Positions 5,630-23,177 of a stretch of 54,199 bases of DNA are shown here, piece by piece. A program made the position numbers and the translations under genes. Origin of the DNA: Octopus bimaculoides (lineage: Eukaryota); assembly GCF_001194135.2 (NCBI RefSeq), contig NC_069002.1, positions 10,621,172-10,675,370 of the forward strand, given 5' to 3'. The notes beneath the pieces are model-generated. The model was not told the origin of the DNA. It did not search any database and was given only the letters and a program-made list of their open reading frames with translations. Every line of letters begins with the position of its first letter. Position 1 is the first letter of the stretch.

Positions 5630-7607
5630 NNNNNNNNNNNNNNNNNNNNNNNNNNNNNNNNNNNNNNNNNNNNNNNNNNNNNNNNNNNNNNNNNNNNNNN
5701 NNNNNNNNNNNNNNNNNNNNNNNNNNNNNNNNNNNNNNNNNNNNNNNNNNNNNNNNNNNNNNNNNNNNNNNNNNNNNNNNNNNNNNNNNNNNNNNNNNNN
5801 NNNNNNNNNNNNNNNNNNNNNNNNNNNNNNNNNNNNNNNNNNNNNNNNNNNNNNNNNNNNNNNNNNNNNNNNNNNNNNNNNNNNNNNNNNNNNNNNNNNN
5901 NNNNNNNNNNNNNNNNNNNNNNNNNNNNNNNNNNNNNNNNNNNNNNNNNNNNNNNNNNNNNNNNNNNNNNNNNNNNNNNNNNNNNNNNNNNNNNNNNNNN
6001 NNNNNNNNNNNNNNNNNNNNNNNNNNNNNNNNNNNNNNNNNNNNNNNNNNNNNNNNNNNNNNNNNNNNNNNNNNNNNNNNNNNNNNNNNNNNNNNNNNNN
6101 NNNNNNNNNNNNNNNNNNNNNNNNNNNNNNNNNNNNNNNNNNNNNNNNNNNNNNNNNNNNNNNNNNNNNNNNNNNNNNNNNNNNNNNNNNNNNNNNNNNN
6201 NNNNNNNNNNNNNNNNNNNNNNNNNNNNNNNNNNNNNNNNNNNNNNNNNNNNNNNNNNNNNNNNNNNNNNNNNNNNNNNNNNNNNNNNNNNNNNNNNNNN
6301 NNNNNNNNNNNNNNNNNNNNNNNNNNNNNNNNNNNNNNNNNNNNNNNNNNNNNNNNNNNNNNNNNNNNNNNNNNNNNNNNNNNNNNNNNNNNNNNNNNNN
6401 NNNNNNNNNNNNNNNNNNNNNNNNNNNNNNNNNNNNNNNNNNNNNNNNNNNNNNNNNNNNNNNNNNNNNNNNNNNNNNNNNNNNNNNNNNNNNNNNNNNN
6501 NNNNNNNNNNNNNNNNNNNNNNNNNNNNNNNNNNNNNNNNNNNNNNNNNNNNNNNNNNNNNNNNNNNNNNNNNNNNNNNNNNNNNNNNNGTTTTTGTTTC
6601 GAGTGAGTTGTGTATGTGTGTGTGTGTTGGGACTTTTTGTGTTTGTTCAGTGTTTCATAACTCTGAGTTCAAGTTCTGCCGGTTATTGGTATTGATTATC
6701 TCCTTGGTGGTATTGGGACGGACGGACGGAGGGAGGGGGGGAGGCGGCTGTTTATGAGGTGGTCAGATAGAAAGCGCAGAAGCAGATGTTGGAAGACAAG
6801 CAGATAGGTAAAGAGAATGATAGAATGATAGTTGTAAAGTGAGGAGGAGTAGGAGGGAGAAAGAGAGAGAGAGGAGGAGGGGAAAGGTAGAGAGAGGGGA
6901 GAGAAGAAAATATAGATGGGTGGAGAAGTGTGAGGTGGTGATGAGGCAGTGAAAGCTTGAGAGGGGGGGGAGAAGCAAAAGGCAGATGTAGACATCAGAG
7001 AGAAGGAATTATGTGTATGGATAGAGAGGGGGGGAGAGTAAGGAGATTGATAAAGAGAGGGTGAAGATATTGCTCGAGGGGGAAAGTGAGAGGCAGAGAG
7101 AAAATAGACGTTGCTAGAGAGAAAGGAAGAGGTTGATGGAGAGAGGAGATTGTAAAGAAGCTGATGACGAAAAAGATATTGATGATGGTGGTAGAGAGAG
7201 AGAAATAGATAGATAGAGAGAGAGAGAATAGAAACATTGAGGAAGAGAGAGACAGAGGAAGTAAAAGACATTGCTGGAGAGAAAGAAAGTGATTGATGGA
7301 GATTGAAGGAGAGACTAAAGGCGCTGATGATTAGAGAAAGTAAAGATATTGATGAGTGGGGGAGGTTGATGGATGGGTGGCTATGGAGAGAAGATGAATA
7401 ATATGCTTGCAGTGGCAGATGATTGAAGAAACGAGAAGAAAAAAAGACCCTGGTTGGAGAGTATGAGTGAAGTATCCATTTGTCTGTCTGTCTGTTTGGC
7501 TGTCTTCCTCCTTTCTTGATCTGTCTGTACATGCACATCGCACTAGCTGCCTCTTCTCCCATTAATACCATCAAAGGAAAGATAACAAAAATTAAAAAAA
7601 TTAATAG

Positions 7608-7771
7608 GCATAGGAGTGGCTGTGTGGTAAGTAGCTTGCTTACCAACCACATGGTTCCAGGTTCAGTCCCACTGCGTGGCATCTTGGGCAAGTGTCTTCT
7701 ATTACAGCCTTGGGCCGACCAAAGCCATGGGAGTGGATTTGGTAGACGGAAACTGAAAGAAGCCTGTCGTA

Positions 7772-7775
<4 letters not shown>
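7608..7775 (+). mobile_element. SINE family A, 5' half running into a gap
   Basis: GGCATAGGAGTGGCTGTGTGGTAAG...GGTTCAGTCCCACTGCGTGGC. Confidence 0.8.
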
Positions 7776-7806
<31 letters not shown>

Positions 7807-9112
7807 NNNNNNNNNNNNNNNNNNNNNNNNNNNNNNNNNNNNNNNNNNNNNNNNNNNNNNNNNNNNNNNNNNNNNNNNNNNNNNNNNNNNNNNNNNNNNN
7901 NNNNNNNNNNNNNNNNNNNNNNNNNNNNNNNNNNNNNNNNNNNNNNNNNNNNNNNNNNNNNNNNNNNNNNNNNNNNNNNNNNNNNNNNNNNNNNNNNNNN
8001 NNNNNNNNNNNNNNNNNNNNNNNNNNNNNNNNNNNNNNNNNNNNNNNNNNNNNNNNNNNNNNNNNNNNNNNNNNNNNNNNNNNNNNNNNNNNNNNNNNNN
8101 NNNNNNNNNNNNNNNNNNNNNNNNNNNNNNNNNNNNNNNNNNNNNNNNNNNNNNNNNNNNNNNNNNNNNNNNNNNNNNNNNNNNNNNNNNNNNNNNNNNN
8201 NNNNNNNNNNNNNNNNNNNNNNNNNNNNNNNNNNNNNNNNNNNNNNNNNNNNNNNNNNNNNNNNNNNNNNNNNNNNNNNNNNNNNNNNNNNNNNNNNNNN
8301 NNNNNNNNNNNNNNNNNNNNNNNNNNNNNNNNNNNNNNNNGGCATGCTAACAATTCTTTTCTACTCTAGGCACAAGGCCTGATATTTTGGGGGAGTGGGG
8401 CCAGTCGGTTAGATCGATCCCCAGTACACAACTGGTACTTGATTTATTGACCCCGAAAGGATGAAAGGCAGTCGACCTCAGCGGAATTTGAACTCGAATA
8501 CCGCTAAGCATTTTGCCTGGTGTGCTAACAATTCTGCCAGCTCACCACCTTAATGATAATAATAATAATAATCCTTTCTACTGTAGGCACAAGGCCTGAA
8601 ATTTTTTTAGTGGATGAGGCTAATCGATTACATCGACTCCACCCCACCCCACCCTCCATCCCAGTAGTCATCTGCTACTTATTTCATCGCCCCCCAAAAG
8701 GATGAAAGGCAAAGTTGACCTTGGTGGAATTTGAACTTAGAAGCATTTTGTCCAACATGGTAATGATTCTGCCAGTTCATTACCTTAGTAAAAATAATAA
8801 TAATAATAATATGGGCTACAGCAAATATTCTGCTCAATACCACAGATTTGCTTGTCGTTTGTTTGACCATAACCAGTTGAGCATGTCCCCTAGTACTTAT
8901 TCTATCAGTCTCTTTTGCCAAACTGCTAAGTTACAGAGATGTAGACACACCGACACTAAGTTGTCAAGTGGTGATGGGACAGGGCATCCAGCTGTAGAAA
9001 CTCTACCAAATCAGATTGTTGGCTGGTGTTGCCATCCGGTTTCACCAGTCCTCAGTCAAATCGTCCAACCCATGATAGCATGGAAAGCGGACGTTAAACG
9101 ATGATGATGACG

Positions 9113-10273: not shown

Positions 10274-10615
10274 GTAGGTGCAGGAGTGGCTGTGTGGTAA
10301 GAAGCTTGCTTCCCAACCACATGGTTCCAGGTTCAGTCCCACTGCGTGGCACCTTTGGCAAGTGTCTTCTGTTATAGCCTCGGGCTGACCAAAGCCTTGT
10401 AGATTTGGTAGATGGAAACTGAAAGAAGCCTGTGGTATATATGTATATGTTTGTATGTCTGTGTTTGTCCCCCCACTATCACTTGACAACCAATGTTGGT
10501 GTGTTTACGTCCCCGTAACTTAGCGGTTCGGCAAAAGTATCCAATGGAATAAGTCCTGGGGTCGATTTGTTCCACTAAAGGTGGTGCTCCAGCACGGCCA
10601 CAAACAGATAAAAGA
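10274..10615 (+). mobile_element. SINE family A
   Basis: Same head, CORE-like segment and tail as the other copies. Confidence 0.8.
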
Positions 10616-11259: not shown

Positions 11260-11679
11260 CCAGTACCGCCTGACTGGCCTTCGTAGGATTTTCGAGCGAG
11301 ATCGTTGCTAGTGCCCCTGGACTGGCTCTTGTGCAGGTGGCACATAAAATACACCATTTTGAGCGTGGCCGTTGCCAGTACCACCTGACTGGCCTTCGTG
11401 CGGGTGACACGTAAAAGCACTCACTACACTCTCAGAGTGGTTGGCGTTAGGAAGGACATCCAGCTGTAGAAACTCTGCCAAATCAGATTGGAGCCTGGTG
11501 TAGCCATCTGGTTTCACCAGTCCTCAGTCAAATCGTCCAACCCATGCTNNNNNNNNNNNNNNNNNNNNNNNNNNNNNNNNNNNNNNNNNNNNNNNNNNNN
11601 NNNNNNNNNNNNNNNNNNNNNNNNNNNNNNNNNNNNNNNNNNNNNNNNNNNNNNNNNNNNNNNNNNNNNNNNNNNNGCT

Positions 11680-11890: not shown

Positions 11891-11931
<41 letters not shown>

Positions 11932-12313
11932 GACGGTCTTCTTTCAGTTTCCATTTAGCAAATCCACTCACAAGGCTTTGGTTGACCCAAGGCTATAATA
12001 GAAGACATTTGCACAAGATGCCATGCAGTGGGACTGAACCCGGAACCATGTGGTTGGTAAGCAAGCTTCTTACCACACATCCACAACTGCACCTATATAT
12101 ATTTACTCTTACTTGTTTCAGCCTTTTGAGACTGTGGCCATGCTGGAGCACTGCCTTTTAGTCGAGCAAATCGACCCCAGGACTTATTCTTTAGAAGCCT
12201 AGTACTTATTCTTTCGCTCTCTTTTGCCGAACCGCTAAGTTACGGGGACATAAACACACCAGCATTGGTTGTCAAGCGATGTTGGGGGAACAAACACACA
12301 CATACAAACATAT

Positions 12314-12388
<75 letters not shown>

Positions 12389-12552
12389 TACAACGGGCTT
12401 CTTTCAGTTTCCGTCTACCAAATCCACTCACAAGGCTTTGGTCGGCCCGAGGCTATAGTAGAAGACACTTGCCCAAGATGCCGCGCAGTGGGACTGAATC
12501 CGGGACCATGTGGTTGGTAAGCTAGCTACTTACCACACAGCCACTCCTATGC
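11680..12552 (-). mobile_element. Two adjacent SINE family A copies (about 11680-12090 and 12103-12552)
   Basis: Both carry the family A head, CORE-like block, internal (TA)n and tail. Confidence 0.85.
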
Positions 12553-12784: not shown

Positions 12785-12975
12785 TAGATGAAGTTGGTAA
12801 CTTCAGACACCTAAGTGTACTAATTAGCCGTAGTTATTTACGGGTGTTGTGAAAATGATGTAACCAGAGTAAAAAGTGAGAATACTATTTCTTCTTGTGG
12901 AAACTGAGAGCTGCTTGCATGAGTAAAGCTCTGGTGGTGTAGTGCTTACGTTACATGGTATGAAAGTATGACTAT
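12785..12975 (+). mobile_element. RTE-type reverse transcriptase fragment
   Basis: EVGNFRHLSVLIS resembles the EVVDSFxYLGDLIS motif; heavily decayed. Confidence 0.45.
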
Positions 12976-13177
12976 AGGCGCAGGCATGGCTGTGTGGTAA
13001 GAAGCTTGCTTCCCAATCACATGGTTCCAGGTTCAGTCCCACTGCGTGGCACCTTTTTTTTTATTAAGCATAAGTAGTCTGGGAACCTTTTGATACCTCC
13101 TCATACATCTGAACCAAAATATATATATAAATATATATTTTTATTTATATTTTTATATATATTTATATATATATCTA

Positions 13178-13440: not shown

Positions 13441-13864
13441 TGTGTTAAATATGAGTGTTATGATCCTCACAAAGTGGATAACAATAATTTGAATTGAAGA
13501 AAAGAGCAGTCAAATTAATGTTGAATGAACATCATTTATTTCGAATTACATACAAAAGTTTAAACAATTCGGGCAACCTCTTCATCAGGCATTGTAATCA
13601 CAATCAAGTTTTATATAAATTCCTCAATATATATGGATGTTTGATAAATATATTTGATGCCTCAGTCTCCATGTCTGTGTCTATCTCTCCCACCCTCTCT
13701 CTTTCTCCTCTCTCTCATCCTCTCTTTGTCTCTCTTTCATATCTTCCTCTCCTCGTCCTTTCCTCTTTCTCTGTCCGTCTATCCGCTGTCCCTTTCTCGA
13801 TGCTTTCTCCCTTCCCACCCAGTTCCATTGACCAATTGACCAACCTTTCTCTTATCTCTGACAG

Positions 13865-13954
13865 AGTGGCTAGCCCAGAATGGATATCTGGACAAGATAT
13901 GGTATTTGAAAGTCCACATCCTCAGTTAAACAGTCGCTCTAGGAAGACACTCAG
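13865..13954 (+). CDS. Upstream exon of the same gene; probable start ATG at 13899 (MVFESPHPQLNSRSRKTL-S...)
   Basis: Acceptor cctttctcttatctctgacag| and donor CAG|gtgaga. The only open frame ends in phase 2 (AG|), which joins T|ATT of 19139 to give Ser in frame. ATG context GATATGG. Confidence 0.7.
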
Positions 13955-14409
13955 GTGAGATAGGCACAGACGAGGAGGTGATGTTGTCATATCTCTCTCT
14001 TTCTATCTCTCTCTCCTTCTATCTCTCTCTCTCTGTTTTTCTGTCTCTTCTCTTATAATTACATTTCCTTTGACTCTGTCTGTTTGCCTGCCTGTTTGTC
14101 TGTCTGTCTCTTGTCTTTATTTTTTCATCTCTACTCTTTTTCTTTTCCTTTCTCCTATTCTTCAACTGTTTCTTGCTTTGAAATGAAACCCTGGTTGCTT
14201 GTCTCAAATTGTGACTGATTCCTTTGTTGATGACGACGTCGACAACAACAAGGGCAATGGTGCTGCCCCTTCCAGTTTTCACCACCATTTCCAGTACTTA
14301 GATTTTGGTATTGTTTTGCATTCATCATCGGCATCAGCAGCAGCAATAAAATTTAGTTGGTTCCATTTTCTTCTTTTTCTCGTCAGCCAATTGACCAAAT
14401 AAAGATTCC

Positions 14410-14646
14410 CTTATTTACATTCGACAGATATTTGTCCCCATCTTGTTTGTTGTTAACACAATGTTTCGGCTGATGTACCCTCCAGCCTTCTTCAGGTGTC
14501 TTGGGGGAAATTTCGAACCTGGGTTCTCATTTCTAAGGTATTCTTCAATGTTGTTGTTATTATTATTGTTATTATTGTTCAGGTCACTGCTTGGTCGGAA
14601 TCTTGGGGTTAGTAGCCCACACTCTTAACCACTACCCCATATGCCC
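14410..14646 (-). mobile_element. tRNA-headed SINE-like element carrying a minimal hammerhead-like motif (14455-14500)
   Basis: Minus strand GGGCATATGGGGTAGTGGTTAAGAG head; GACAC-CTGAAGA-A-GGCTG(10)CAGCC-GAAA-CATT-GTGTT. Confidence 0.7.
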
Positions 14647-14764
14647 GTGAGCTTTTTTTTTTTTTTTTGAAGTCTAATGTCGGCTCCGTACCAATTAGAT
14701 AATACAGTTCTATATTTAAGAGATGAGGAATTATGTACATTATTTACATTCGTCGGATACCCAC

Positions 14765-14960
14765 GGGCAAATGGCGTAGTGGTTAAGAGCGTGGGCTTCT
14801 GAGTCCGATTCCAAGCAGTGACCTGAACAATAACATCGAAGAATACCTCAGGAATGAGAAGCCAGGTTCGAAATTTCCCCAAGACACCTGAAGAAGGCTG
14901 GAGGGTATATCAGCCGAAACGTTGTTAACAACAAACAAGATGAGGACAAATATCCGTCAA
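14765..14960 (+). mobile_element. Second, inverted copy of the tRNA-headed hammerhead-bearing element
   Basis: ATGGCGTAGTGGTTAAGAGCG head; GACAC-CTGAAGA-A-GGCTG(10)CAGCC-GAAA-CGTT-GTT at 14883-14926. Confidence 0.7.
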
Positions 14961-15482
14961 NNNNNNNNNNNNNNNNNNNNNNNNNNNNNNNNNNNNNNNN
15001 NNNNNNNNNNNNNNNNNNNNNNNNNNNNNNNNNNNNNNNNNNNNNNNNNNNNNNNNNNNNNNNNNNNNNNNNNNNNNNNNNNNNNNNNNNNNNNNNNNNN
15101 NNNNNNNNNNNNNNNNNNNNNNNNNNNNNNNNNNNNNNNNNNNNNNNNNNNNNNNNNNNNNNNNNNNNNNNNNNNNNNNNNNNNNNNNNNNNNNNNNNNN
15201 NNNNNNNNNNNNNNNNNNNNNNNNNNNNNNNNNNNNNNNNNNNNNNNNNNNNNNNNNNNNNNNNNNNNNNNNNNNNNNNNNNNNNNNNNNNNNNNNNNNN
15301 NNNNNNNNNNNNNNNNNNNNNNNNNNNNNNNNNNNNNNNNNNNNNNNNNNNNNNNNNNNNNNNNNNNNNNNNNNNNNNNNNNNNNNNNNNNNNNNNNNNN
15401 NNNNNNNNNNNNNNNNNNNNNNNNNNNNNNNNNNNNNNNNNNNNNNNNNNNNNNNNNNNNNNNNNNNNNNNNNNNNNNNNNN

Positions 15483-15690
15483 NTAATAGTAGCAGTAGTA
15501 ATAGTAATAATAGTAGTTGCAGTAGTAGTAGTAGTAATAGTAGTAGTAATAATAGTAGTAGTAATAATAGTAGTAATAGTAGTAGTAATAGTAGTAGTAA
15601 TAGTAGTAGTAGTAGTCGTAAAAGTAATAGTACAATAGTAGTAGTAAAAGTAGTGGTAGTGGTAGTAATAGTAAAAGTAGTAGTAGTAGT
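15483..15690. repeat. (TAG/TAA)n trinucleotide microsatellite bordering a gap
   Basis: Direct inspection. Confidence 0.95.
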
Positions 15691-15799
15691 AAAAGGCTGA
15701 CCAAAGCCTTGTGAGTGCATTTGGTAAATAGAAACTGAAAGAAGTCTATAATAAATATATATATATATATATATAGTACTAGGGGAAAAAAAACCCCCA

Positions 15800-17040
15800 A
15801 GGTTTATGAACTCATCGATGAAAATCCACTGTCACATATAGAAAACATTTATAGTTAAAAGTATAATATAACACAAAGCAAATATCATAAGATCAAGATA
15901 ATAAAATGACTACACGTGTTTCGTAACCAATTTTCAAATATAAAGAAATTTAAATCGATTAAAATCGATTAAAACTATCAAAAATCAATTCTATTCAAAA
16001 TTATAGCTAATCTTCAGGTCAAAATACAACAATAATAATAATAAATGAATGTATATATCAACCAACAATAAATAACAAATGAATGTATATAAAATACTTA
16101 TATATATAGATAGAAAAATATTATTGAAATATCAAAATAATAACCATTCCATAATTGATCCTACATCCATTATAAAATAATCTAATAAGTATATTATATA
16201 TAAAAACCAACTAAACAAATTTTTTCATTTAAAATGCAATTTGAACGAAGTTTAAGGTTAAAATAAAAAAGATATTATTTGCACATATTTAAATGATGCA
16301 ATAGTTTAAGCTAGGCTATTTATGATTAAAAACATTTATTTGTAATACGTCTAGTGAAAATATTCCGTATAGTATAGGAAATTAACATAAAAAGACTAGG
16401 TATTTATCACATAAAACAGTATTAATCGAAAATATTTTAACCTTAATCAAATCGAAGTCTTATATTAGGCTAAAATGGTACTCTAATTTCAAAATAATTT
16501 AGTGTTAAATGAGGTATCGATTAAAATTATCATTAAAAATCAATTGAATAATAAAAAAAAATACAAGAATATTTATACATTCCTAATAATAATATAACTT
16601 CGTAAACAAAGTAAACAATATACAAATCAAAATGTTATTATATTTCAAACTGAAACTTAGATGTAAAAGTCAAAATTCGAGGTTAATTAGAAATAAAAAT
16701 ATGAATGAAAGATTAAGCTTAATGAAAGATTAAGCTTAAGTCATAGTAAAAAACCCATTAACAATATTATAAACAAAGAAAAAGGTTAGTTATTTATATC
16801 ATAATATAGAATGAAATATTAAACAATATTAATCGAAAATATTACAAATCTAATCAAATCGAAGTCGTATTTCGGTTAAAATGATACTCTCACTTCTAAA
16901 TAATTTATTGTTAAAAAAGGTATTGATTAAAAATCAATTGAATAATATAAAAATACAACTTAATTTAATTTTAATTTTTAATAAATGGATTTTAATTGAG
17001 TTTTTACCTGTAATTTTGGATTTTATCCCTAATATTATTA
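15800..17040. repeat. Extremely AT-rich block with diverged internal repeats (~400-570-bp period)
   Basis: TTAATCGAAAATATT...AATCAAATCGAAGTC at about 16423 and 16829; ATCGATTAAAA...AAAAATCAATT at about 15955, 16517 and 16922. Confidence 0.6.
15907..16021 (-). ncRNA. Type I hammerhead-like motif with a long AT-rich helix II
   Basis: Minus strand TGAC-CTGAAGA-[TTAGCTATAATTTTGAATA...TATTTGAAAATTGGTTAC]-GAA-ACACGTGT-A-GTCA. Helix I TGAC/GTCA is perfect, helix III is palindromic, triplet GUA. Confidence 0.55.
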
Positions 17041-17224
17041 TTATAATATATATATATATATATACATACATACATTCAATCCAGGGCAATTTGTCTTGCC
17101 TAGTCTATGGTTTTCAGGGGTTTTAATGCCCAGCGTTATTAGGGAGTCTCCCTAAATGCTGTCCTGCAGTGAATTTGACGAATAAAGAAACCACATACAT
17201 AGTGTATATGTGATAGATAATGTT

Positions 17225-17600
17225 TTTTGCTTCCCAACCACATGGTTCCAGGTTCAGTCCCACTGCGTGGCACCTTGGGCAAGTGCCTTCTACTATATCC
17301 TCGGGCTGACCAAGGCTTTGTGAGCGGATTTGGTAGGCGGAAACTAAAAGAAGCCTGTCATATATATGTATGTATATATCTATGTGTGTGTGTGTCTTTG
17401 TGGCTACATTTGTCCTCCCTCCATCCTGGTTGACAACCGGTGTTGGTATGTTTATGTCCCCATAGCTTAGCAGTTCAGCAAAAGAAACCAAGAGAATAAG
17501 TACTAGGCTTAAAAATAAGTCCTAGGGTCAATATGTTTGATTAAAACCCTTTAAGCCACTGCTCCAGCATGGCCACAGTGAAATGACAAACAAGTAAAAG

Positions 17601-17661
<61 letters not shown>

Positions 17662-17910
17662 GTGTGTGTGTATTTGTCCCCAACAACTGCTTGACAACTG
17701 GTGTTGGTGTGTTTACGTCACCCCCCCCCCCCNNNNNNNNNNNNNNNNNNNNNNNNNNNNNNNNNNNNNNNNNNNNNNNNNNNNCCCCATAAAAGAGAAT
17801 GATAGAATAAATTCCAGGCTTTACAAAAATTAAGTTGGATTGATTTGCTTGACTAAAACTCTTCCAGGTAGTGCCCCAGCATGGCCGCAGTCTCATGACT
17901 GAAACAAGTA
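17225..17910 (+). mobile_element. SINE family A copy plus a second 3' fragment
   Basis: Family A consensus blocks. Confidence 0.75.
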
Positions 17911-18289
17911 AATGTTAAAATGTAAACACGAGTCGATATTCTGTAGATGAGGACTAATAGGCTGGAACTTGTCCACAGGTGTCCCTTGCCAACATACAAA
18001 CATGATGATGATGATAATGATGTTGAATACATAGGTGGTTGTCTGTGTTGTTATTGTTTGTTTTTTAATGTTAATTCCGATCTTTTCCTTTTGTTTTTTT
18101 TCTCCTCCATTTTTCTTATTTTTCTAACTTCCTTAGAGATTTAACTACAAACAAATATTGTTAATCTATTAATCTATTTGGAATGGTGAGCTGGGAGAAT
18201 CAGCACATCAGACAAAATGTTTAGTGGGTTTTTTTTGTTTTTGTCTGATTCATTCCATTTGGAGTTCCAATTCCACCAATGTTGACTTT

Positions 18290-18765
18290 TGAATACAGAA
18301 GTGATCAAAGACCTCCAGCTCCTGGAGTTCAGTAACACGAATTGGCCAATGTGTGTTGCTGTATCTCCAGAAGCTGGCGGCCTCCAATCGCTTCTGTATT
18401 TGTCTTCTCCTACTGCATATCGCATACCGTATTTTGAACTGATAACTTTACGCTCACCGCGGTTTCTCACTTCTTGAGGGAACGCTTCTGACAAGGAGAC
18501 TACAGTGGTTTGGTCATGCATTGTGGTGCCCTCATGATGAACTTGTCCAGAAGGCTGTAGCACCAGATCTTCCCCTCCCCGGGTTGGTGTAAGCAGATGA
18601 GGGTGGTCAGCTGAAAACGTGGCCCATGACAGTAAAAACTGATATGGAGCTTGTTGCCACTTTTCAAGTCTTTGGCGTTCATTGCTGGAACCAAGAATGG
18701 CCTCAACACACTGTAGAGTCAGTTGCCAATAGACATGCTGAGAGGGTCATGACCTGGAGTCAATT
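18290..18765 (+). mobile_element. Degenerate 3' end of an RTE-type LINE ORF (RT C-terminal region)
   Basis: Frameshifted + strand peptide ...LQKLAASNRFC...LLTRRLQWFGHALWCPHDELVQKA...GGQLKTW...FGVHCWNQEW, matching the RRLRWFGH / GGQxKTW motifs of RTE ORFs. Confidence 0.75.
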
Positions 18766-19138
18766 CAACTGGCATTTTACCAGCCACTGGGCCACCCACT
18801 GGGCCACCCACTGGAAAAATGTTTAGCCTTCTACTTTAAGTTTTGATCAGTAATATTCTTTTTCCTGATTTCACTTTATGAAACAGTGGCCATGCTGTGG
18901 CAACACCTTGTAAAGTGCAGTCAATTTCATCATCAGGCAAGCGTGTAATTTGAACTCCTGGATTCAAAATATGAAGAGGTGTAAGCCAATTGTCACACAG
19001 TATACGTATCTGATGCTCTACTCACTATCATTCGCCTGCTAATTTTTAAAATTTCTTTGTTCAGTTGTTTGTTTATTTCCAATATCTGTGTTACATAAAA
19101 AAATTAACAATGATATTTTTTTCTTTTTATTCTTGCAG

Positions 19139-22100
19139 TATTGCTGCCGTGACCCGTTCTTCAACGAAAACTTCTGTCGTCAAAGACAATTCCATTCCAG
19201 TCGCTGATTTTTACGCTGAATCGATATTTTCGCCACCGGGTGTCAAAACCCGACAACGCCGTCAATCAATGTATGTGCAAAAGCAAGTCCCAAATGTCTC
19301 GTTTTCAGTTACGAAACAGGACGTGACGTTCTCCGAAACAAGCTCGTTGACTTCTTCCAAGGTGACCAACGTCTCGAGTCGCACCATAACAACCGTCCAG
19401 CAGACAAAGTCATCTTCGCAGATGTCTGCTCTGGTTGGCAGTGACCAGGCGGTCGAAGGACTGGCAGGCGAGAAGGAGACAATCAGTGAAGAAATCAGCA
19501 ACATCATTAATAACCTTCGCGACTCAAATCGCAAGCGCAAGTCTGATGTGCAGTCACTGGAGACTTCTGACGTCAAAGAAAAAGTGCCAAAACCTTCAAA
19601 GACACTGGAAGAAGAGAAATTGTCTCTGGTTAGGAGTTTGTCGTTGAAGGAGAGGTCCAAAGAGAATGTTTCGACAGCGGGAAGCGAAGACATAACCAAA
19701 TTAGTTACTGTGGATATCGTTTCCGAAGAACTGGAAGCCGCTGCAGTAGAAGAAGAAGAGGTTCCGCCCGATATACAAGATAATTCCAGTAAAGCTAAGA
19801 AAAGCACACCACAGAAGAAGAAGCCTGGAAGAAAAAGCAAGTCTCCCGCTGCTAAAACAAAGACAACCAGGACACGGAAGACAAGTACTTCGAAGGCCAA
19901 AAACCAAGAAACCGATTCTGAAGAAGTAGCAACGGTTGAAGTGGTTGTAGATAGCAGCAGTACTACACCTGCAAGAAAGAAAAGGGGCGCGACGCCAGTA
20001 AAAGCAAAAGCGAGCAGTAAAGGGGCAAAGAGAAGTACCACTCCTAAAAGACAAGCAAGTGCACCAAGCAAGGAATTGGTTGTAGAAGCCATTGCTCCAG
20101 TCAAGAAAGAAAGGAGATCACGATCAGTGGGGCCGAAGAGTAAAAGAAAAGTAGATGAGGTGCCGGCAGACAAAGCAGACGAGGGTGCCGCTTCGGTTGA
20201 AACGAAAGAAACATCTAAAAAGGGCTCCCGTTCACGTAAAAGTACTCCTCAAGCTGAAGGGTCTCAAAAATCTTCTGTAAAAGGCTCACGTAAGAAATCG
20301 ACTTCAAGGAAATCAACTCCAGTGAGAAAGGCAACCCCTACGAAAAAGCGTACTCCGAGAAAGGCTACTCCGTCTAGAGAACGAAAGGCTACTCCCACAA
20401 GAAAGGCCACCCCCACGAGGAAGGCCACTCCCACAAAGAGTGCCACACCCACAAGAAAGACTGCTCCTGCTAAGAAAGCCACTGCATCTAGGGAAGCAAC
20501 TCCTGCCAGAAAAGCCGATACTCCTGTCAGAGAGGTTACTCCTGCTAGAAAATCTGCCACTCCACCCCGAGAAAGTACTCCTGCTAGAAAATCTGCCACT
20601 CCACCCCGAGAAAGTACTCCTGCAAGAAAGGCCACTCCTTCTAGAGAAGCAACTCCTGCTAGAAAGGGTACTCCTGCTAGAGAAGCAACTCCTGCTAGAA
20701 AGGCTACTGCTACTAGAAAGGGTACTCCTGCTAGAAAGGGTACTGATACTAGAAAGGGTACTCCTGCTAGAAAGGGTACTCCTACTAGAAAGGCCACACC
20801 TTCTCGAGAAACAAGCGTCGCGAGAAAATCGTCTCCAAAGAAGGTCACCCCTTCTAGGGAAGCTACACCTGCACGAAAGAGTACTGCTAGGAAAGCAACA
20901 CCTTCCCGAGAAACTGCTTCTAGAAAGGCAACTGCTAAAAAGGGTAGTCCCATTAGGCAGTCAACACCTTCGAGAAAAAGTACCCCTGTTAGACAGTCAA
21001 CACCTTCTAGGAGAGGATCTCCGGTCAAAGAGAAGACATTGCAACAGAAATCTAGTGGGAAGAAGTCACAGAAAACATCACGGTCTCGAAGCAAAACAAA
21101 GAGAGTCCACAAGCGTGCTTCTTCAAAGAAAGCCGGTAAGAAGAAAACAGTGCTGGCCACGCAGGAAAAAGAATCCTTGGCTACTGTTGGGGCTGATGAA
21201 AAAGCAGCAGCACCACCCCCACAAAAGACAACCACCAGTAGTAGCTCTTCTATGTCTACAATAATCACAGGTCTCTTTAAGCATTTCGCCCCAAGCCAGA
21301 AAAAGGCAAAAGTAGTTGAGTCCACCACCACAACAACGACAGTTGGTGGTTCCGTGGCTGCCGAGTCTGAAGTTAATACAGGGGAAGAGCCGAAAAGAAA
21401 GATACCAGAGGCAAGAAAACGTGCACTGATTTCTTCGCCTCTGGATTCCAGCACACCTGAGGTTCCCCAGGCTCCTAAAGCATCTTTCGTTAGCAGACTG
21501 AGAGATACAGCTTCAAGCCTGTCTCCATTTGCCTTGAGCAGGTCGTTCGAGTATAAGCGTGCTGTTGTGGCGTCGGCTAACAACAAAACTGTAGAGATTT
21601 CGCAGACGGTCACACATCCAGGAATGACCGCTGGCAAAGGATTAGATGAGACTGACCAGCCAACGTCAGCGGTACAACAGGTTGTTGAAATGAGCTCCAC
21701 TCATGCAACAGTTGAAGAGGATGAAAGCAAACAGAAGCAAGGGGAAAAAGTTGTCGACACACGAGAAACGTATTATGAGTCCCAGGAATCAGAAATTGAT
21801 GAGGGGTCGATCCTTGATAAGCTGGTTCATTATGAGTCACAACAGTCTGAGATAGAGGAGGTGGAAGCTGATAAGCAGAAACTTGTTCACTATGAGTCCC
21901 AGCATGACACTGAGGAAGAGTCCCAGGTTGAGACAGAAGATGACTCCCACGTTGAGATGGAGAATGAGGTGGAGGAAGAGTCACATGGTGTGGTGGCGAA
22001 AAAGACCCATGTTGAAGAAGCAGAAGAAGAAGAGGAAGAGTCATGTGATGTGGTGGGGAAAAGGACCTATGTTGAGGAAGAAGAGTCCCAGGTCGAGACA

Positions 22101-22943
22101 GAAGAAGAGTCACATGATGTGGTGAAGAAAAAGACCTATGTTGAGGAAGAAGAGTCCCAGGATGAGACAGAAGAAGAGTCACATGATGTGGTGGAGAAAA
22201 AGACCTATGTTGAGGAAGAAGAGTCCCAGGACGAGACAGAAGAGGAGTCACATGCAGTGGTCGAGAAAAAGACCTATGTTGAGGAAGAAGAGTCCCAGGA
22301 CGAGACAGAAGAGGAGTCACATGAAGTGGTGAAGAAAAAGACCTATGTTGAGGAAGAAGAGTCCCAGGACGAGACAGAAGAGGAATCACATGCAGTGGTG
22401 GAGAAAAAGACCTATGTTGAGGAAGAAGAGTCCCAGGTCGAGACAGAGAATGACTCCCAGGTGGAGTCTCAGGTTGAGTCCCAAATTGAAACAGAAGATG
22501 AATCCCTGCTTGAGATTGAAAACAAGACAGATGATGGTACTGCTGAAATATCCAATATCACTATGGATACAAGGGAGTTTGTTTCATCCGAAAGAAATGT
22601 AACCGTCCACTATGAGTCACAAGAGTCGGAATTGTTAACAGAGGAAGAAGATGATGGTTCCTGTGTGGTGAATGGTGTTGAAGAGGAAGGCAGTGAAGCC
22701 AAAGAAGGGGACGTAGGGAAAGGAAAAGAACATTATCTTGAACAGCATGTCGTTTGTGATTATGTCAAAGAACACCGTTTCACAGTCAACAACAAAGAGA
22801 CTGACGACTCCTCACAAGAGCCCATCCGATCGAAAGGTGAAGACGAAGAAGAAGAAGAGGAGGAGGAAGAAACAAGGGGAAGGGTGTTGACTAGAAGACA
22901 AGCGGCAGCTGCAGCAACGAAAGGGTCGTCGTTGAGAGCAAAG

Positions 22944-22975
<32 letters not shown>

Positions 22976-23177
22976 GACAAGGAAATCGATGCTGGGTAAG
23001 AGAGGCGCCGAGAAAGTACTAGAAGATACTCCCTACGACTTGGAGCCGCCAAAGAAGATCTTCACCGAGGTGATGGATGAGGATGAAACGATGGAGATGG
23101 CAGACAAGGACGAAGAGGCGAACGCCCTCTTTGACTCGTATTACTCTGGCTACGGACTACGCTGCACCATCCTCTGA
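19139..23177 (+). CDS. Large terminal coding exon of an uncharacterised low-complexity protein: Lys/Arg-rich TPxR/K repeat region, Glu-rich 23-aa repeat, C-terminal CaaX (CTIL)
   Basis: 4.1-kb open frame in otherwise repeat-only DNA. Strong acceptor ttttttctttttattcttgcag| at 19138 (phase 2, T|ATT GCT GCC), codon-preserving tandem repeats, stop TGA 23175-23177 followed by TAA. Confidence 0.9.
20310..21030 (+). repeat. Coding short-period repeat (mostly 18-21 nt) encoding ATPARK/GTPARK/STPSRK units
   Basis: Repeated ACTCCTGCTAGAAAG motif. Confidence 0.9.
21975..22445 (+). repeat. Coding 69-nt (23-aa) tandem repeat KKTYVEEEESQDETEEESHxVVE
   Basis: GACCTATG anchors at 22064, 22133, 22202, 22271, 22340 and 22409, plus a degenerate one at 22004. 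Confidence 0.95.

What the first reader, a model, noticed from the sequence alone, without database searches (positions are those of the whole stretch)
13865..23177. Apparently domain-less ~1364-aa charge-segregated protein ending in a CaaX box
Seen: the spliced model 13899-13954 + 19139-23177 has no recognisable globular domain. It has a strongly basic N-terminal half, a strongly acidic C-terminal third, basic clusters, and ends ...DSYYSGYGLRCTIL*. Established: Cys-aliphatic-aliphatic-Leu is a GGTase-I prenylation consensus, and prenylated nuclear proteins such as lamins and Drosophila Kugelkern associate with the inner nuclear membrane. Inference: a lineage-specific membrane-anchored chromatin tether or nuclear-shape protein.
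Basis: partly seen in the sequence, partly recalled or inferred. Interest (0 to 1): 0.75.

Follow-up and report, generated by a model that had tools for sequence, protein, structure and literature searches.

The report
Disordered octopus-type protein ending in CaaX
This is a real, expressed gene for a very long, unfolded protein with a positively charged half, a negatively charged third and a lipid-attachment signal (CTIL) at its end, so it is probably a membrane-tethered charged "brush", perhaps at the nuclear envelope, but where it sits and what it does are untested.

Summary
RNA contigs from three runs carry the exact junction 13954|19139. Both assembly gaps lie inside that intron, and exon 2 (19139-23177) has no N. 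RNA covers exon 2 through the TGA stop. The product is at least 1364 aa and about 150 kDa, with 0 Trp and 4 Cys, and no Pfam, PDB or AlphaFold-supported domain. It has a basic block (aa 230-700, pI 11.8) holding 36 full CDK-consensus sites, mostly in 6-aa repeats. It has an acidic block (aa 851-1270, pI 4.1) with six 23-aa repeats, and it ends ...DSYYSGYGLRCTIL*.

CTIL is the same tetrapeptide shown to prenylate and membrane-target human OAS1 p46. A related species (about 92% nucleotide identity) keeps the ORF open, with in-frame indels only. dN/dS is about 0.2 at both termini, and the last 14 residues, including CTIL and the stop, are identical.

Three corrections apply:
- The frame is open upstream of ATG 13899 and a further 5' exon lies outside the window, so the N-terminus may be longer.
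- Thr at a1 is not aliphatic.
- The acidic-repeat copy number is uncertain.

The "inner-nuclear-membrane chromatin tether" idea is plausible by analogy (NLS-like clusters, long disordered linker, lipid anchor) but unproven. "Lineage-specific" could not be tested, because the protein databases do not even hold this protein. Interest is moderate.

The parts
13865..13954 (+). Internal exon holding the modelled start codon (ATG 13899-13901) and the first 18 codons plus 2 nt. The frame is also open over 13865-13898.
   Evidence: AG acceptor and GT donor are in the sequence. RNA contigs of X3, X4 and X10 cover 13864-13954 and continue on both sides into other exons. In the related species B the ATG and both splice sites are kept, with 1 non-synonymous (S12T) and 1 synonymous change.
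13880..13909 (+). Out-of-frame upstream ATG in strong context (A at -3, G at +4) opening a 9-codon uORF that overlaps the modelled start.
   Evidence: Read from the sequence. It implies either uORF control or a true start in the upstream exon.
13955..19138 (+). Intron of about 5.2 kb as assembled. It contains both flagged assembly gaps (14961-15483, 17733-17784) and SINE-like copies.
   Evidence: Junction 13954|19139 is present in RNA contigs. N runs listed. SINE-like copies at 15695-15775 and 17227-17383.
19139..23177 (+). Giant last coding exon (aa 19-1364 plus TGA).
   Evidence: ORF. Continuous RNA depth in 4 runs. A colinear contig of about 92% identity exists in species B, with all resolvable indels in multiples of 3.
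19467..19559 (+). Short amphipathic helix, aa about 129-159 (GEKETISEEISNIINNLRDSNRKRKSDVQ). It is the only confidently predicted structural element and ends in an RKRK basic cluster.
   Evidence: AlphaFold pLDDT reaches 97 here. The stretch is identical in species B.
20103..20153 (+). Bipartite NLS-like cluster KKERRSRSVGPKSKRKV (aa 341-357). PKSKRKV matches the SV40 NLS PKKKRKV at 6 of 7 positions but lacks the critical second Lys.
   Evidence: Motif scan. The comparison with SV40 is from established knowledge. It is one of several basic clusters, the others being RKRK at 150, KKKPGRKSK at 245, RKKR at 298 and KRVHKRASSKKAGKKK at 673.
20316..21029 (+). Basic Thr-Pro repeat block (aa 412-649). 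About 40 degenerate hexapeptides of type A-T-P-x-R-K/E carry 32 of the protein's 36 [ST]-P-x-[KR] CDK-consensus sites.
   Evidence: Tandem Repeats Finder reports an 18-nt period over 20383-20793. Motif counts and hexamer parsing.
21633..22892 (+). Acidic block (aa 851-1270, pI 4.1). It includes six 23-aa repeats TEEESHxVVxKKTYVEEEESQxE (22031-22447), HYESQxSE motifs and a run of poly-Glu.
   Evidence: 69-nt repeat, 6.0 copies, 93% match. Composition. Species B has 53 fewer codons here.
23133..23174 (+). Conserved C-terminal tail DSYYSGYGLRCTIL. The CaaX box is Cys1361-Thr-Ile-Leu at 23163-23174, and the stop is at 23175-23177.
   Evidence: Sequence. The 14 residues are identical in species B, with a single synonymous change (23157) over 23133-23177. 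No RNA variant at or above 10% here.
23178..23420 (+). 3' UTR (minimum extent) with a 24-nt tandem duplication at 23187-23241.
   Evidence: RNA depth reaches 23420 in X24. Tandem repeat. Species B lacks about 24 nt here.

Best explanation
The locus is a bona fide, widely transcribed gene. It encodes a protein of at least 1364 aa (about 150 kDa) that is almost wholly intrinsically disordered, with separate basic and acidic blocks.

Proposed mechanism, from the C-terminus.
1. Cys1361 of the terminal CTIL is geranylgeranylated by GGTase-I. The -TIL is removed and the Cys is methylated on ER or nuclear-envelope membrane. The protein becomes a peripheral membrane protein anchored by its C-terminus.
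2. The 35 residues next to the anchor and the following roughly 420-aa block are strongly acidic. They should be repelled from the membrane surface and act as an extended spacer.
3. Beyond the spacer lies a block of about 470 aa with net charge about +104. It carries NLS-like clusters and 36 CDK-consensus sites, most of them in about 40 TPxRK-type repeats, which makes it a polyanion-binding arm resembling the histone H1 tail or the nucleolin N-terminus.
4. I think the most likely location is the inner nuclear membrane. The layout 'NLS + long unfolded linker + membrane anchor' is what drives active import of Heh2-type proteins. 'NLS + CaaX' is sufficient for nuclear-membrane targeting of lamins, Kugelkern and GFP-NLS-CaaX.
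5. There the basic arm would bind chromatin. Phosphorylation by mitotic CDK would neutralise it and release chromatin.

Shown: gene model, expression, disorder, charge blocks, motif content, purifying selection on both termini, CTIL conserved in one relative.

Inferred: prenylation, location, ligand, CDK switch.
For: Gene model and transcription.
- Splice junction and read-through to the stop are seen in RNA.
- At least 15 RNA runs from 5 studies hold 92% or more of the exon's sampled 31-letter words.

Disorder.
- 0 Trp, 4 Cys, and a maximum 19-residue Kyte-Doolittle mean of 0.98, so no membrane-spanning segment. Uversky windows are mostly in the disordered range.
- No Pfam or PDB match. AlphaFold gives low confidence apart from isolated helices.

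Motifs.
- 36 [ST]Px[KR] sites and several basic clusters.

CTIL as a working signal.
- CTIL is functionally validated in OAS1 p46: appended to p42 it gives perinuclear membrane localisation, and C397A abolishes this (PMC7612834).

Conservation in related species B.
- The ORF is kept open by indels of 3, 3, 15, 33, 54, 93, 45, 159, 12, 39, 15 and 6 nt.
- dN/dS is 0.21 over 139 N-terminal codons and 0.16 over 63 C-terminal codons, with pS 0.19-0.28.
- The last 14 aa are identical. Roughly 9 replacement changes would be expected there under neutrality.

Precedents.
- Kugelkern has a coiled coil, an NLS and a CaaX box, localises to the inner nuclear membrane, and its C567S mutant is nucleoplasmic. 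GFP-NLS-CaaX is active on the nuclear membrane (PMC2947476).
- NLS plus a disordered linker drives inner-nuclear-membrane import of Heh1/Heh2 and Pom121 (PMC4569319, PMC4695851).
Against: - There is no experimental or localisation evidence of any kind.
- The prenylated nuclear-envelope proteins named in the paper read here (lamins, Kugelkern) are farnesylated, whereas X = Leu predicts geranylgeranyl.
- From general knowledge, geranylgeranylation tends to hold NLS-bearing GTPases such as Rac1 outside the nucleus, and CaaX-only proteins default to ER and Golgi.
- The SV40-like cluster lacks the critical Lys, and no NLS predictor was available.
- Conservation of CTIL itself in one close relative is weak evidence: the probability of no change by chance is about 0.1-0.2 at pS 0.19-0.28.
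- Alternating acidic and basic blocks with TPxK-type repeats are equally typical of soluble nucleolar proteins (nucleolin, Nopp140).
- The N-terminus may be incomplete, so a domain encoded by upstream exons cannot be excluded.
Confidence: 0.35

Rival explanations
1. The protein is prenyl-anchored on cytoplasmic membranes (ER, Golgi or plasma membrane) rather than in the nucleus. The basic Thr-Pro repeat arm would bind microtubules, RNA or ribosomes, or acidic lipids. It would then be a membrane-cytoskeleton or membrane-RNA linker, analogous in logic to ER p180/RRBP1 (basic tandem repeats) or to proline-rich MAP regions controlled by proline-directed kinases such as CDK5 in neurons.
For: - The same CTIL box sends OAS1 p46 to perinuclear endomembranes, not into the nucleus.
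- There is no polybasic or Cys second signal next to the CaaX box, and the juxtamembrane region is acidic. From established knowledge of Ras and Rho targeting, this predicts endomembranes by default.
- Basic S/T-P-rich regions are typical microtubule-binding segments (general knowledge).
Against: - The protein has many strong basic clusters that usually work as nuclear localisation signals.
- [ST]Px[KR] sites at this density are most typical of mitotic chromatin and nucleolar proteins.
- Nothing in the sequence specifically indicates microtubule or ribosome binding.
Confidence: 0.25
2. The protein is a soluble nuclear, nucleolar or chromosome-periphery phosphoprotein of nucleolin, Nopp140 or Ki-67-like composition. 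On this reading the terminal CTIL is not used, or is used only marginally, and the tail is conserved for another reason, for example as a short linear binding motif.
For: - The block architecture of acidic tracts, Lys/Arg blocks and TPxK/R repeats resembles nucleolar proteins (general knowledge of the nucleolin N-terminus).
- About 1-2% of proteins carry CaaX-like ends (PMC11152559 abstract), and some such ends are not modified.
- Conservation of the tail covers 14 residues, not only CTIL.
Against: - CTIL is a proven substrate sequence in another protein.
- Cys is very rare in this protein (4 of 1364), yet one sits exactly at position -4.
- The tail preceding it (DSYYSGYGLR) is small and polar, as prenyltransferase substrates usually are.
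Confidence: 0.25
3. The long ORF is not a genuine protein-coding gene. It would be a repeat-rich transcribed region or an assembly artefact whose open frame and CaaX end are accidental.
For: - The sequence is low in complexity, with tandem 18-nt and 69-nt repeats.
- No homologue was found in the protein libraries.
Against: - The ORF has 1345 codons and a spliced, abundant mRNA.
- A second species keeps the frame through at least 12 indels, all multiples of 3, with dN/dS about 0.2.
- DNA contigs of independent runs of the same species match exactly.
- The library searches did not find even the query itself, so they say nothing either way.
Confidence: 0.02

Closest known systems
Drosophila Kugelkern (and Kurzkern/Charleston)
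   Same: Both are non-lamin proteins with no recognisable globular domain. Each has an N-terminal helix or coiled-coil segment, NLS-type basic clusters and a C-terminal CaaX box. Both are restricted, as far as is known, to a narrow lineage. Kugelkern is anchored to the inner nuclear membrane through its CaaX Cys (PMC2947476).
   Different: Kugelkern has 570 aa and is farnesylated. The protein here has at least 1364 aa and ends in Leu, which predicts geranylgeranyl. It also has huge separated basic and acidic repeat blocks and 36 CDK sites. Sequence homology to Kugelkern was not tested, because no Kugelkern sequence was on hand, and it is not expected.
B-type lamin tail (NLS ... acidic stretch ... 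CaaX)
   Same: Both have basic NLS clusters, an acidic run shortly before the C-terminus and a terminal CaaX box.
   Different: This protein has no intermediate-filament rod and no lamin-tail Ig fold (no Pfam hit). Lamins are farnesylated (X = Met).
Human OAS1 p46 CaaX box
   Same: The terminal tetrapeptide CTIL is identical. In OAS1 it is predicted to be geranylgeranylated and is necessary and sufficient for membrane targeting (PMC7612834).
   Different: The rest of the protein is unrelated: OAS1 is a folded nucleotidyltransferase. OAS1 p46 goes to cytoplasmic endomembranes.
Nucleolin N-terminal region, histone H1 C-terminal tail, Ki-67
   Same: All have tandem TPxK/R or SPKK-type basic repeats that are CDK substrates and bind nucleic acid. 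In nucleolin these are combined with long acidic tracts. Ki-67 is a very long, disordered, charged 'brush' on chromatin (general knowledge).
   Different: This protein has no RRM or GAR domains, no H1 globular domain, and no FHA or Ki-67 repeats. None of those proteins has a lipid anchor.
Yeast Heh1/Heh2 and metazoan Pom121 inner-nuclear-membrane targeting module
   Same: The layout is the same: a membrane anchor, a long intrinsically disordered linker and a strong NLS (PMC4569319, PMC4695851).
   Different: Their anchors are transmembrane helices. Here the anchor would be a C-terminal isoprenoid, and no hydrophobic segment exists.

Membership tests
CaaX substrates of GGTase-I | Cys exactly four residues from the translated C-terminus | tested here: met
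   TGC at 23163-65 is followed by ACC ATC CTC TGA. RNA reads through the stop, with no joint at or above 10% removing it.
CaaX substrates of GGTase-I | X = Leu (or Phe), with an aliphatic a2 | tested here: met
   a2 is Ile and X is Leu. a1 is Thr, which is not aliphatic but is tolerated: the identical CTIL is functional in OAS1 p46.
CaaX substrates of GGTase-I | Motif conserved in orthologues | tested here: inconclusive
   CTIL and the stop are identical in the one related species reachable. That species is close (pS 0.19-0.28), so the chance of no change is about 0.1-0.2.
CaaX substrates of GGTase-I | Isoprenoid actually attached, followed by -aaX proteolysis and methylation | not testable with these tools
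   This needs metabolic labelling, mass spectrometry or an in vitro GGTase-I assay.
Kugelkern-type prenylated inner-nuclear-membrane proteins | Architecture of N-terminal helix or coiled coil, NLS and C-terminal CaaX | tested here: met
   A helix at aa about 129-159, basic clusters and CTIL. This is a match of architecture only.
Kugelkern-type prenylated inner-nuclear-membrane proteins | Farnesyl-type CaaX (X = Met, Ser, Gln or Ala) | tested here: not met
   X is Leu, which predicts geranylgeranylation.
Kugelkern-type prenylated inner-nuclear-membrane proteins | Sequence homology to Kugelkern and Cys-dependent localisation at the nuclear rim | not tested
Localisation needs an experiment.
Lamins | Intermediate-filament rod (PF00038) and lamin tail domain (PF00932) | tested here: not met
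   No Pfam hit at E-values up to 1-5 apart from sub-threshold noise.
Nucleolin / Nopp140 / Treacle-type nucleolar phosphoproteins | RRM plus GAR domains (nucleolin), or LisH plus SRP40 (Nopp140) | tested here: not met
   No Pfam hit. Only the composition resembles them.
Heh2/Pom121-type actively imported inner-nuclear-membrane proteins | Transmembrane anchor | tested here: not met
   The maximum 19-residue hydropathy is 0.98, so there is no transmembrane segment.

The most novel reading that the evidence does not exclude
A cephalopod protein unlike any described family that is geranylgeranyl-anchored to the inner nuclear membrane. It would carry an acidic spacer and a CDK-switchable polycationic Thr-Pro repeat arm that tethers chromatin in interphase and lets go in mitosis. 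That would make it the first geranylgeranylated, and the first non-lamin, non-insect, prenylated nuclear-envelope tether.
Probability: 0.25. Interest if true: 0.65.

Novelty: new variant of a known kind. Interest (0 to 1): 0.4.

Why it matters
Outside lamins, prenyl-anchored nuclear-envelope proteins are known essentially only from Drosophila (Kugelkern, Kurzkern). Those proteins show that a lipidated, largely unfolded protein can by itself reshape nuclei. A second, independent example in a mollusc would show that this solution has evolved repeatedly. This one would use a different isoprenoid and a clear block design of anchor, acidic spacer and basic phospho-switchable arm, which makes it a simple natural model of an electrostatic membrane-chromatin tether.

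If the protein instead turns out to be cytoplasmic or soluble, it is one more fast-evolving disordered protein and of limited interest.

Tried and rejected
Homology searches that found nothing.
- Full-length protein against the 5.8-billion-protein word-indexed library: no hit.
- A concatenation of the four non-repetitive segments, as an artificial query: no hit.
- C-terminal 215 aa against all 1.84 billion representatives: no hit.
- None of these recovered the query's own protein. A control with the neighbouring ORF at 38623-39297 found only one Logan-derived relative at 81% identity. These libraries therefore barely cover this lineage, and 'orphan' cannot be concluded.
- Exact look-ups of window ORFs in the assembly index found nothing. 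The spliced protein was not accepted for look-up.

Other checks that led nowhere.
- Pfam on the whole protein and on segments gave only sub-threshold noise: DUF963 on the TP repeats, CbiG_C and DUF3439. PDB sequences gave none.
- No PacBio RNA runs were available.
- seemed to show that species B lacks the C-terminal 65 codons. This was an artefact of thousands of (ACA)n and (GAA)n microsatellite contigs swamping the alignment. Restricting the stretch to 22981-23420 recovered the orthologous contig.

Corrections and rejected motifs.
- I first noted an in-frame stop upstream of ATG 13899. On re-reading, that TAG (13871-73) is out of frame and the frame is open. This is corrected in the notebook.
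- The 5' exon sequence seen in RNA (…CAGAAGAAAGGGCTCCAAGTTTCACACAC) is not in the window.
- No PP1-docking RVxF motif, strict D-box or AT-hook is present. There is one KEN (aa 193) and one RxxL (aa 15), too few to interpret.
- The joint 13174>13864 in X10 is a chance (TA)n match.

Full report

Yes. The window looks like a repeat-rich metazoan genome. It has a tRNA-like SINE in at least 15 copies, (TA)n, (CA)n and (TC)n microsatellites, and scaffold gaps, which fits a cephalopod.

The long + strand ORF at 19065-23177 is by far the longest in the window.

The scan's program asked that continuity across the gaps be tested first. The two N runs (14961-15483, 17733-17784) lie inside the intron, and no N lies in the coding exon. 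RNA contigs from three independent runs carry the junction exactly. Contigs laid on exon 2 continue upstream as …TCAGTTAAACAGTCGCTCTAGGAAGACACT, which is the end of the small exon. Contigs laid on the small exon continue downstream as TATTGCTGCCGTGACCCG…, which is the start of exon 2. Order, orientation and frame across the gaps are therefore established by mRNA. Only the intron length is uncertain.

RNA depth is continuous over exon 2 and runs through the TGA at 23175-77 into the 3' UTR. At least 15 RNA runs from five studies hold 92% or more of the exon's sampled words, so expression is broad.

The only joint that would remove the stop is 22039>22944 (GT..AG). It is supported by 4 reads against a depth of about 100, and it would frameshift to a 1011-aa product. 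It is minor and may be a template-switch artefact in GAA-rich repeats. No RNA-DNA difference at or above 10% touches the last codons.

**2. What the protein looks like**

The spliced model gives 1364 aa, 150 kDa and pI 6.5. The composition is E189, S169, T155, K150, with no Trp and four Cys.

| Region (aa) | Character | Key features |
|---|---|---|
| 1-229 | about neutral | conserved helix at aa 129-159 |
| 230-700 | basic, pI 11.8, K+R 138 / D+E 34 | TP repeats, CDK sites, basic clusters |
| 701-850 | mildly basic, least polar | none recognised |
| 851-1270 | acidic, pI 4.1, K+R 37 / D+E 151 | six 23-aa repeats |
| 1271-1364 | tail | ends in CTIL |

- **Basic block.** It contains about 40 degenerate hexapeptides of type A-T-P-x-R-K/E (18-nt period). 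It holds all 36 full CDK-consensus sites [ST]-P-x-[KR], 32 of them within aa 412-649. It also holds most of the basic clusters: KKKPGRKSK at 245, RKKR at 298, the bipartite-like KKERRSRSVGPKSKRKV at 341 and KRVHKRASSKKAGKKK at 673. RKRK at 150 lies in the N-terminal region.
- **Acidic block.** It contains six near-identical 23-aa units TEEESHxVVxKKTYVEEEESQxE (69-nt period, 93% match), several HYESQxSE motifs and dozens of CK2-type sites.
- **Structure.** There is no hydrophobic segment; the maximum 19-residue hydropathy is 0.98. Pfam, PDB sequences and segment-wise Pfam find nothing. Single-sequence AlphaFold gives mean pLDDT 38.9 for aa 700-1364 with one helix, and 56 for aa 20-250. In the latter, only a helix at aa about 129-159 (…ETISEEISNIINNLRDSNRKRK…, pLDDT up to 97) and a second at aa 175-192 stand out.

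I add that there is one short conserved amphipathic helix.

**3. Corrections to the model**

1. The reading frame is open from the first base of exon 13865-13954 (RVASPEWISGQD-M). It stays open through the 28 visible nt of a further upstream exon (…RRKGSKFHT) seen in RNA contigs. That exon is absent from the window. An out-of-frame ATG in strong context at 13880 precedes the modelled ATG. The true start may therefore lie upstream, and 1364 aa is a minimum. An N-terminal domain encoded outside the window cannot be excluded.
2. The a1 residue of the CaaX box is Thr, which is not aliphatic.
3. The number of 69-nt repeats is uncertain. RNA contigs break there, and 25-40% of reads carry alternative letters at 22255-22401.

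**4. Related sequences**

The large protein libraries returned nothing, not even the query itself. A control with the neighbouring ORF returned a single Logan-derived protein at 81% identity. These negatives are uninformative about lineage restriction.

The k-mer index did reveal a second organism, "B" (runs X34 and X35, 6% of words). Its DNA contigs are colinear with the gene.

- One 3056-nt contig spans 19051-22039 at about 92% identity.
- Every indel I could resolve is a multiple of 3: 3, 3, 15, 33, 54, 93, 45, 159, 12, 39, 15 and 6 nt.
- Exon 1 keeps the ATG and both splice sites.

From the complete difference lists I rebuilt B's first 139 codons of exon 2 and its last 63 codons.

| Region | dN/dS | pS | pN |
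|---|---|---|---|
| N-terminal 139 codons of exon 2 | 0.21 | 0.19 | 0.044 |
| C-terminal 63 codons | 0.16 | 0.28 | 0.054 |

B's tail reads …DNDEEAKALYDSYYSGYGLRCTIL*. The last 14 residues, the CaaX box and the stop are identical, with one synonymous change.

Both termini are therefore under purifying selection, and the refutation test "orthologues lack the terminal Cys" is passed for this one relative. The species are close, however. Conservation of the four CaaX codons alone would occur by chance with a probability of about 0.1-0.2. For the 14-residue tail, roughly 9 replacements would be expected under neutrality, against 0 observed.

**5. Is CTIL a credible prenylation signal?**

Yes, on three grounds.

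- The identical tetrapeptide is the CaaX box of human OAS1 p46 and is predicted to be geranylgeranylated. Mutation of its Cys abolishes membrane localisation and activity. Appending CTIL to the p42 isoform is enough to relocalise it to perinuclear membranes (PMC7612834).
- The preceding residues (DSYYSGYGLR) are small and polar.
- Cys is otherwise almost absent from this protein.

About 1-2% of proteins carry such ends. One CaaX end is not remarkable proteome-wide, but in this protein it is unlikely to be idle. I put prenylation at about 0.6-0.65.

**6. Mechanism**

There is no neighbouring Cys or polybasic patch. The 35 residues before the box have 12 D/E against 2 K/R. From established Ras and Rho targeting rules, the default destination is ER, Golgi or nuclear-envelope membrane rather than plasma membrane.

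The order of parts, starting from the membrane, is lipid anchor, acidic spacer of about 500 aa, basic NLS-bearing arm of about 470 aa, and N-terminal helix. Two established principles make the inner nuclear membrane the most likely destination.

- NLS plus CaaX suffices for nuclear-membrane association, as shown for lamins, Kugelkern and GFP-NLS-CaaX. Kugelkern C567S becomes nucleoplasmic (PMC2947476).
- NLS plus a long unfolded linker plus a membrane anchor drives active import of Heh1/Heh2 and Pom121 (PMC4569319, PMC4695851).

The TPxRK array resembles H1 and nucleolin-type nucleic-acid-binding tails. It is a dense CDK substrate, which suggests release from chromatin on mitotic phosphorylation.

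All of this is inference. The rivals are listed with their weights:

- a cytoplasmic endomembrane scaffold that binds microtubules or RNA (0.25);
- a soluble nucleolar or chromatin phosphoprotein with an idle CaaX box (0.25);
- an artefact (0.02).

The main point against the nuclear model is that the prenylated nuclear-envelope proteins named are farnesylated. From general knowledge, geranylgeranylation tends to retain NLS-bearing proteins outside the nucleus.

**7. Comparison and novelty**

By architecture, the closest known thing is Drosophila Kugelkern, with its helix or coiled coil, NLS and CaaX box and no globular domain. This protein fails the farnesyl-type criterion, is 2.4 times longer, and adds the charge-block and CDK-repeat design. 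Homology to Kugelkern was not tested.

It is not a lamin, not nucleolin or Nopp140, and not a Heh2-type protein, because the defining domains or a transmembrane segment are absent. I class it as a new variant of a known kind, a CaaX-anchored disordered protein that is plausibly nuclear.

**8. Verdict**

- Interest is about 0.4.

Noticed in passing
outside the window; joins 13865: RNA contigs show at least one further 5' exon (…CAGAAGAAAGGGCTCCAAGTTTCACACAC[G]) spliced onto 13865. It is not found anywhere in the window, which has gaps upstream at 11549-11676, 7807-8340 and 5630-6589. The frame with the main ORF stays open through its visible part.
   Followed up: partly
13880-13909: An out-of-frame ATG in strong Kozak context opens a 9-codon uORF that overlaps the modelled start codon at 13899.
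   Followed up: no
22031-22447: The 69-nt acidic repeats have an uncertain copy number. RNA contigs break here, and raw RNA reads show 25-40% alternative letters at 22255, 22262, 22263, 22385, 22393 and 22401. This points to allelic or copy-number variation, or to cross-mapping between units. Species B is 159 nt (53 codons) shorter in this region.
   Followed up: partly
22039 to 22944: A minor GT..AG joint (4 raw RNA reads in X24) skips 904 nt inside the exon. It would frameshift to a 1011-aa product without the CaaX box. It may be a rare exitron or a template-switch artefact.
   Followed up: partly
22946-22980 and 22832-22895: The (ACA/AAC)n poly-Thr and (GAA)n poly-Glu microsatellites inside the CDS attract thousands of reads and contigs from other loci. 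Depth reaches 100,000s, and the apparent G>A at 22967 comes from this. This noise hid the orthologous C-terminal contig in one analysis.
   Followed up: yes
23187-23241: A perfect 24-nt tandem duplication (GCTCCCCCTGCTGTTTACATCTCA, 2.3 copies) lies 10 nt after the stop codon. Species B lacks about 24 nt here, so the duplication looks recent.
   Followed up: partly
20271: Six raw RNA reads leave the exon at 20271 into sequence that is not in the window (ACATCATACCACTCAAAATACGCGTATATG). There is no GT donor there. This is unexplained and could be a chimera or a polymorphic insertion.
   Followed up: no
e.g. 7603-7800, 45878-46075, 12360-12552(-), 36855-37037(-), 11900-12084(-), 49317-49497, 10282-10456, 29776-29927, 17227-17383, 12974-13055: A tRNA-like SINE of about 190 nt (GGCGCAGGCATGGCTGTGTGGTAAGAAGCTTGCTTCCC…GGTTCAGTCCCACTGCGTGGCACC) is present in at least 15 copies at 80-94% identity. 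It is often followed by (TA)n and an assembly gap. The copy at 12964-13090 collects very high multi-locus RNA depth.
   Followed up: partly
38623-39297 (+): A non-repetitive 224-aa ORF (MAESPRISGLFLGSKDDQIKSMCNILKFGQDVFKEF…) has one homologue at 81% identity (P0001, Logan-derived, 225 aa) and a weak sub-threshold Pfam DUF7809 match (E = 0.056). It is probably a neighbouring gene or exon.
   Followed up: partly
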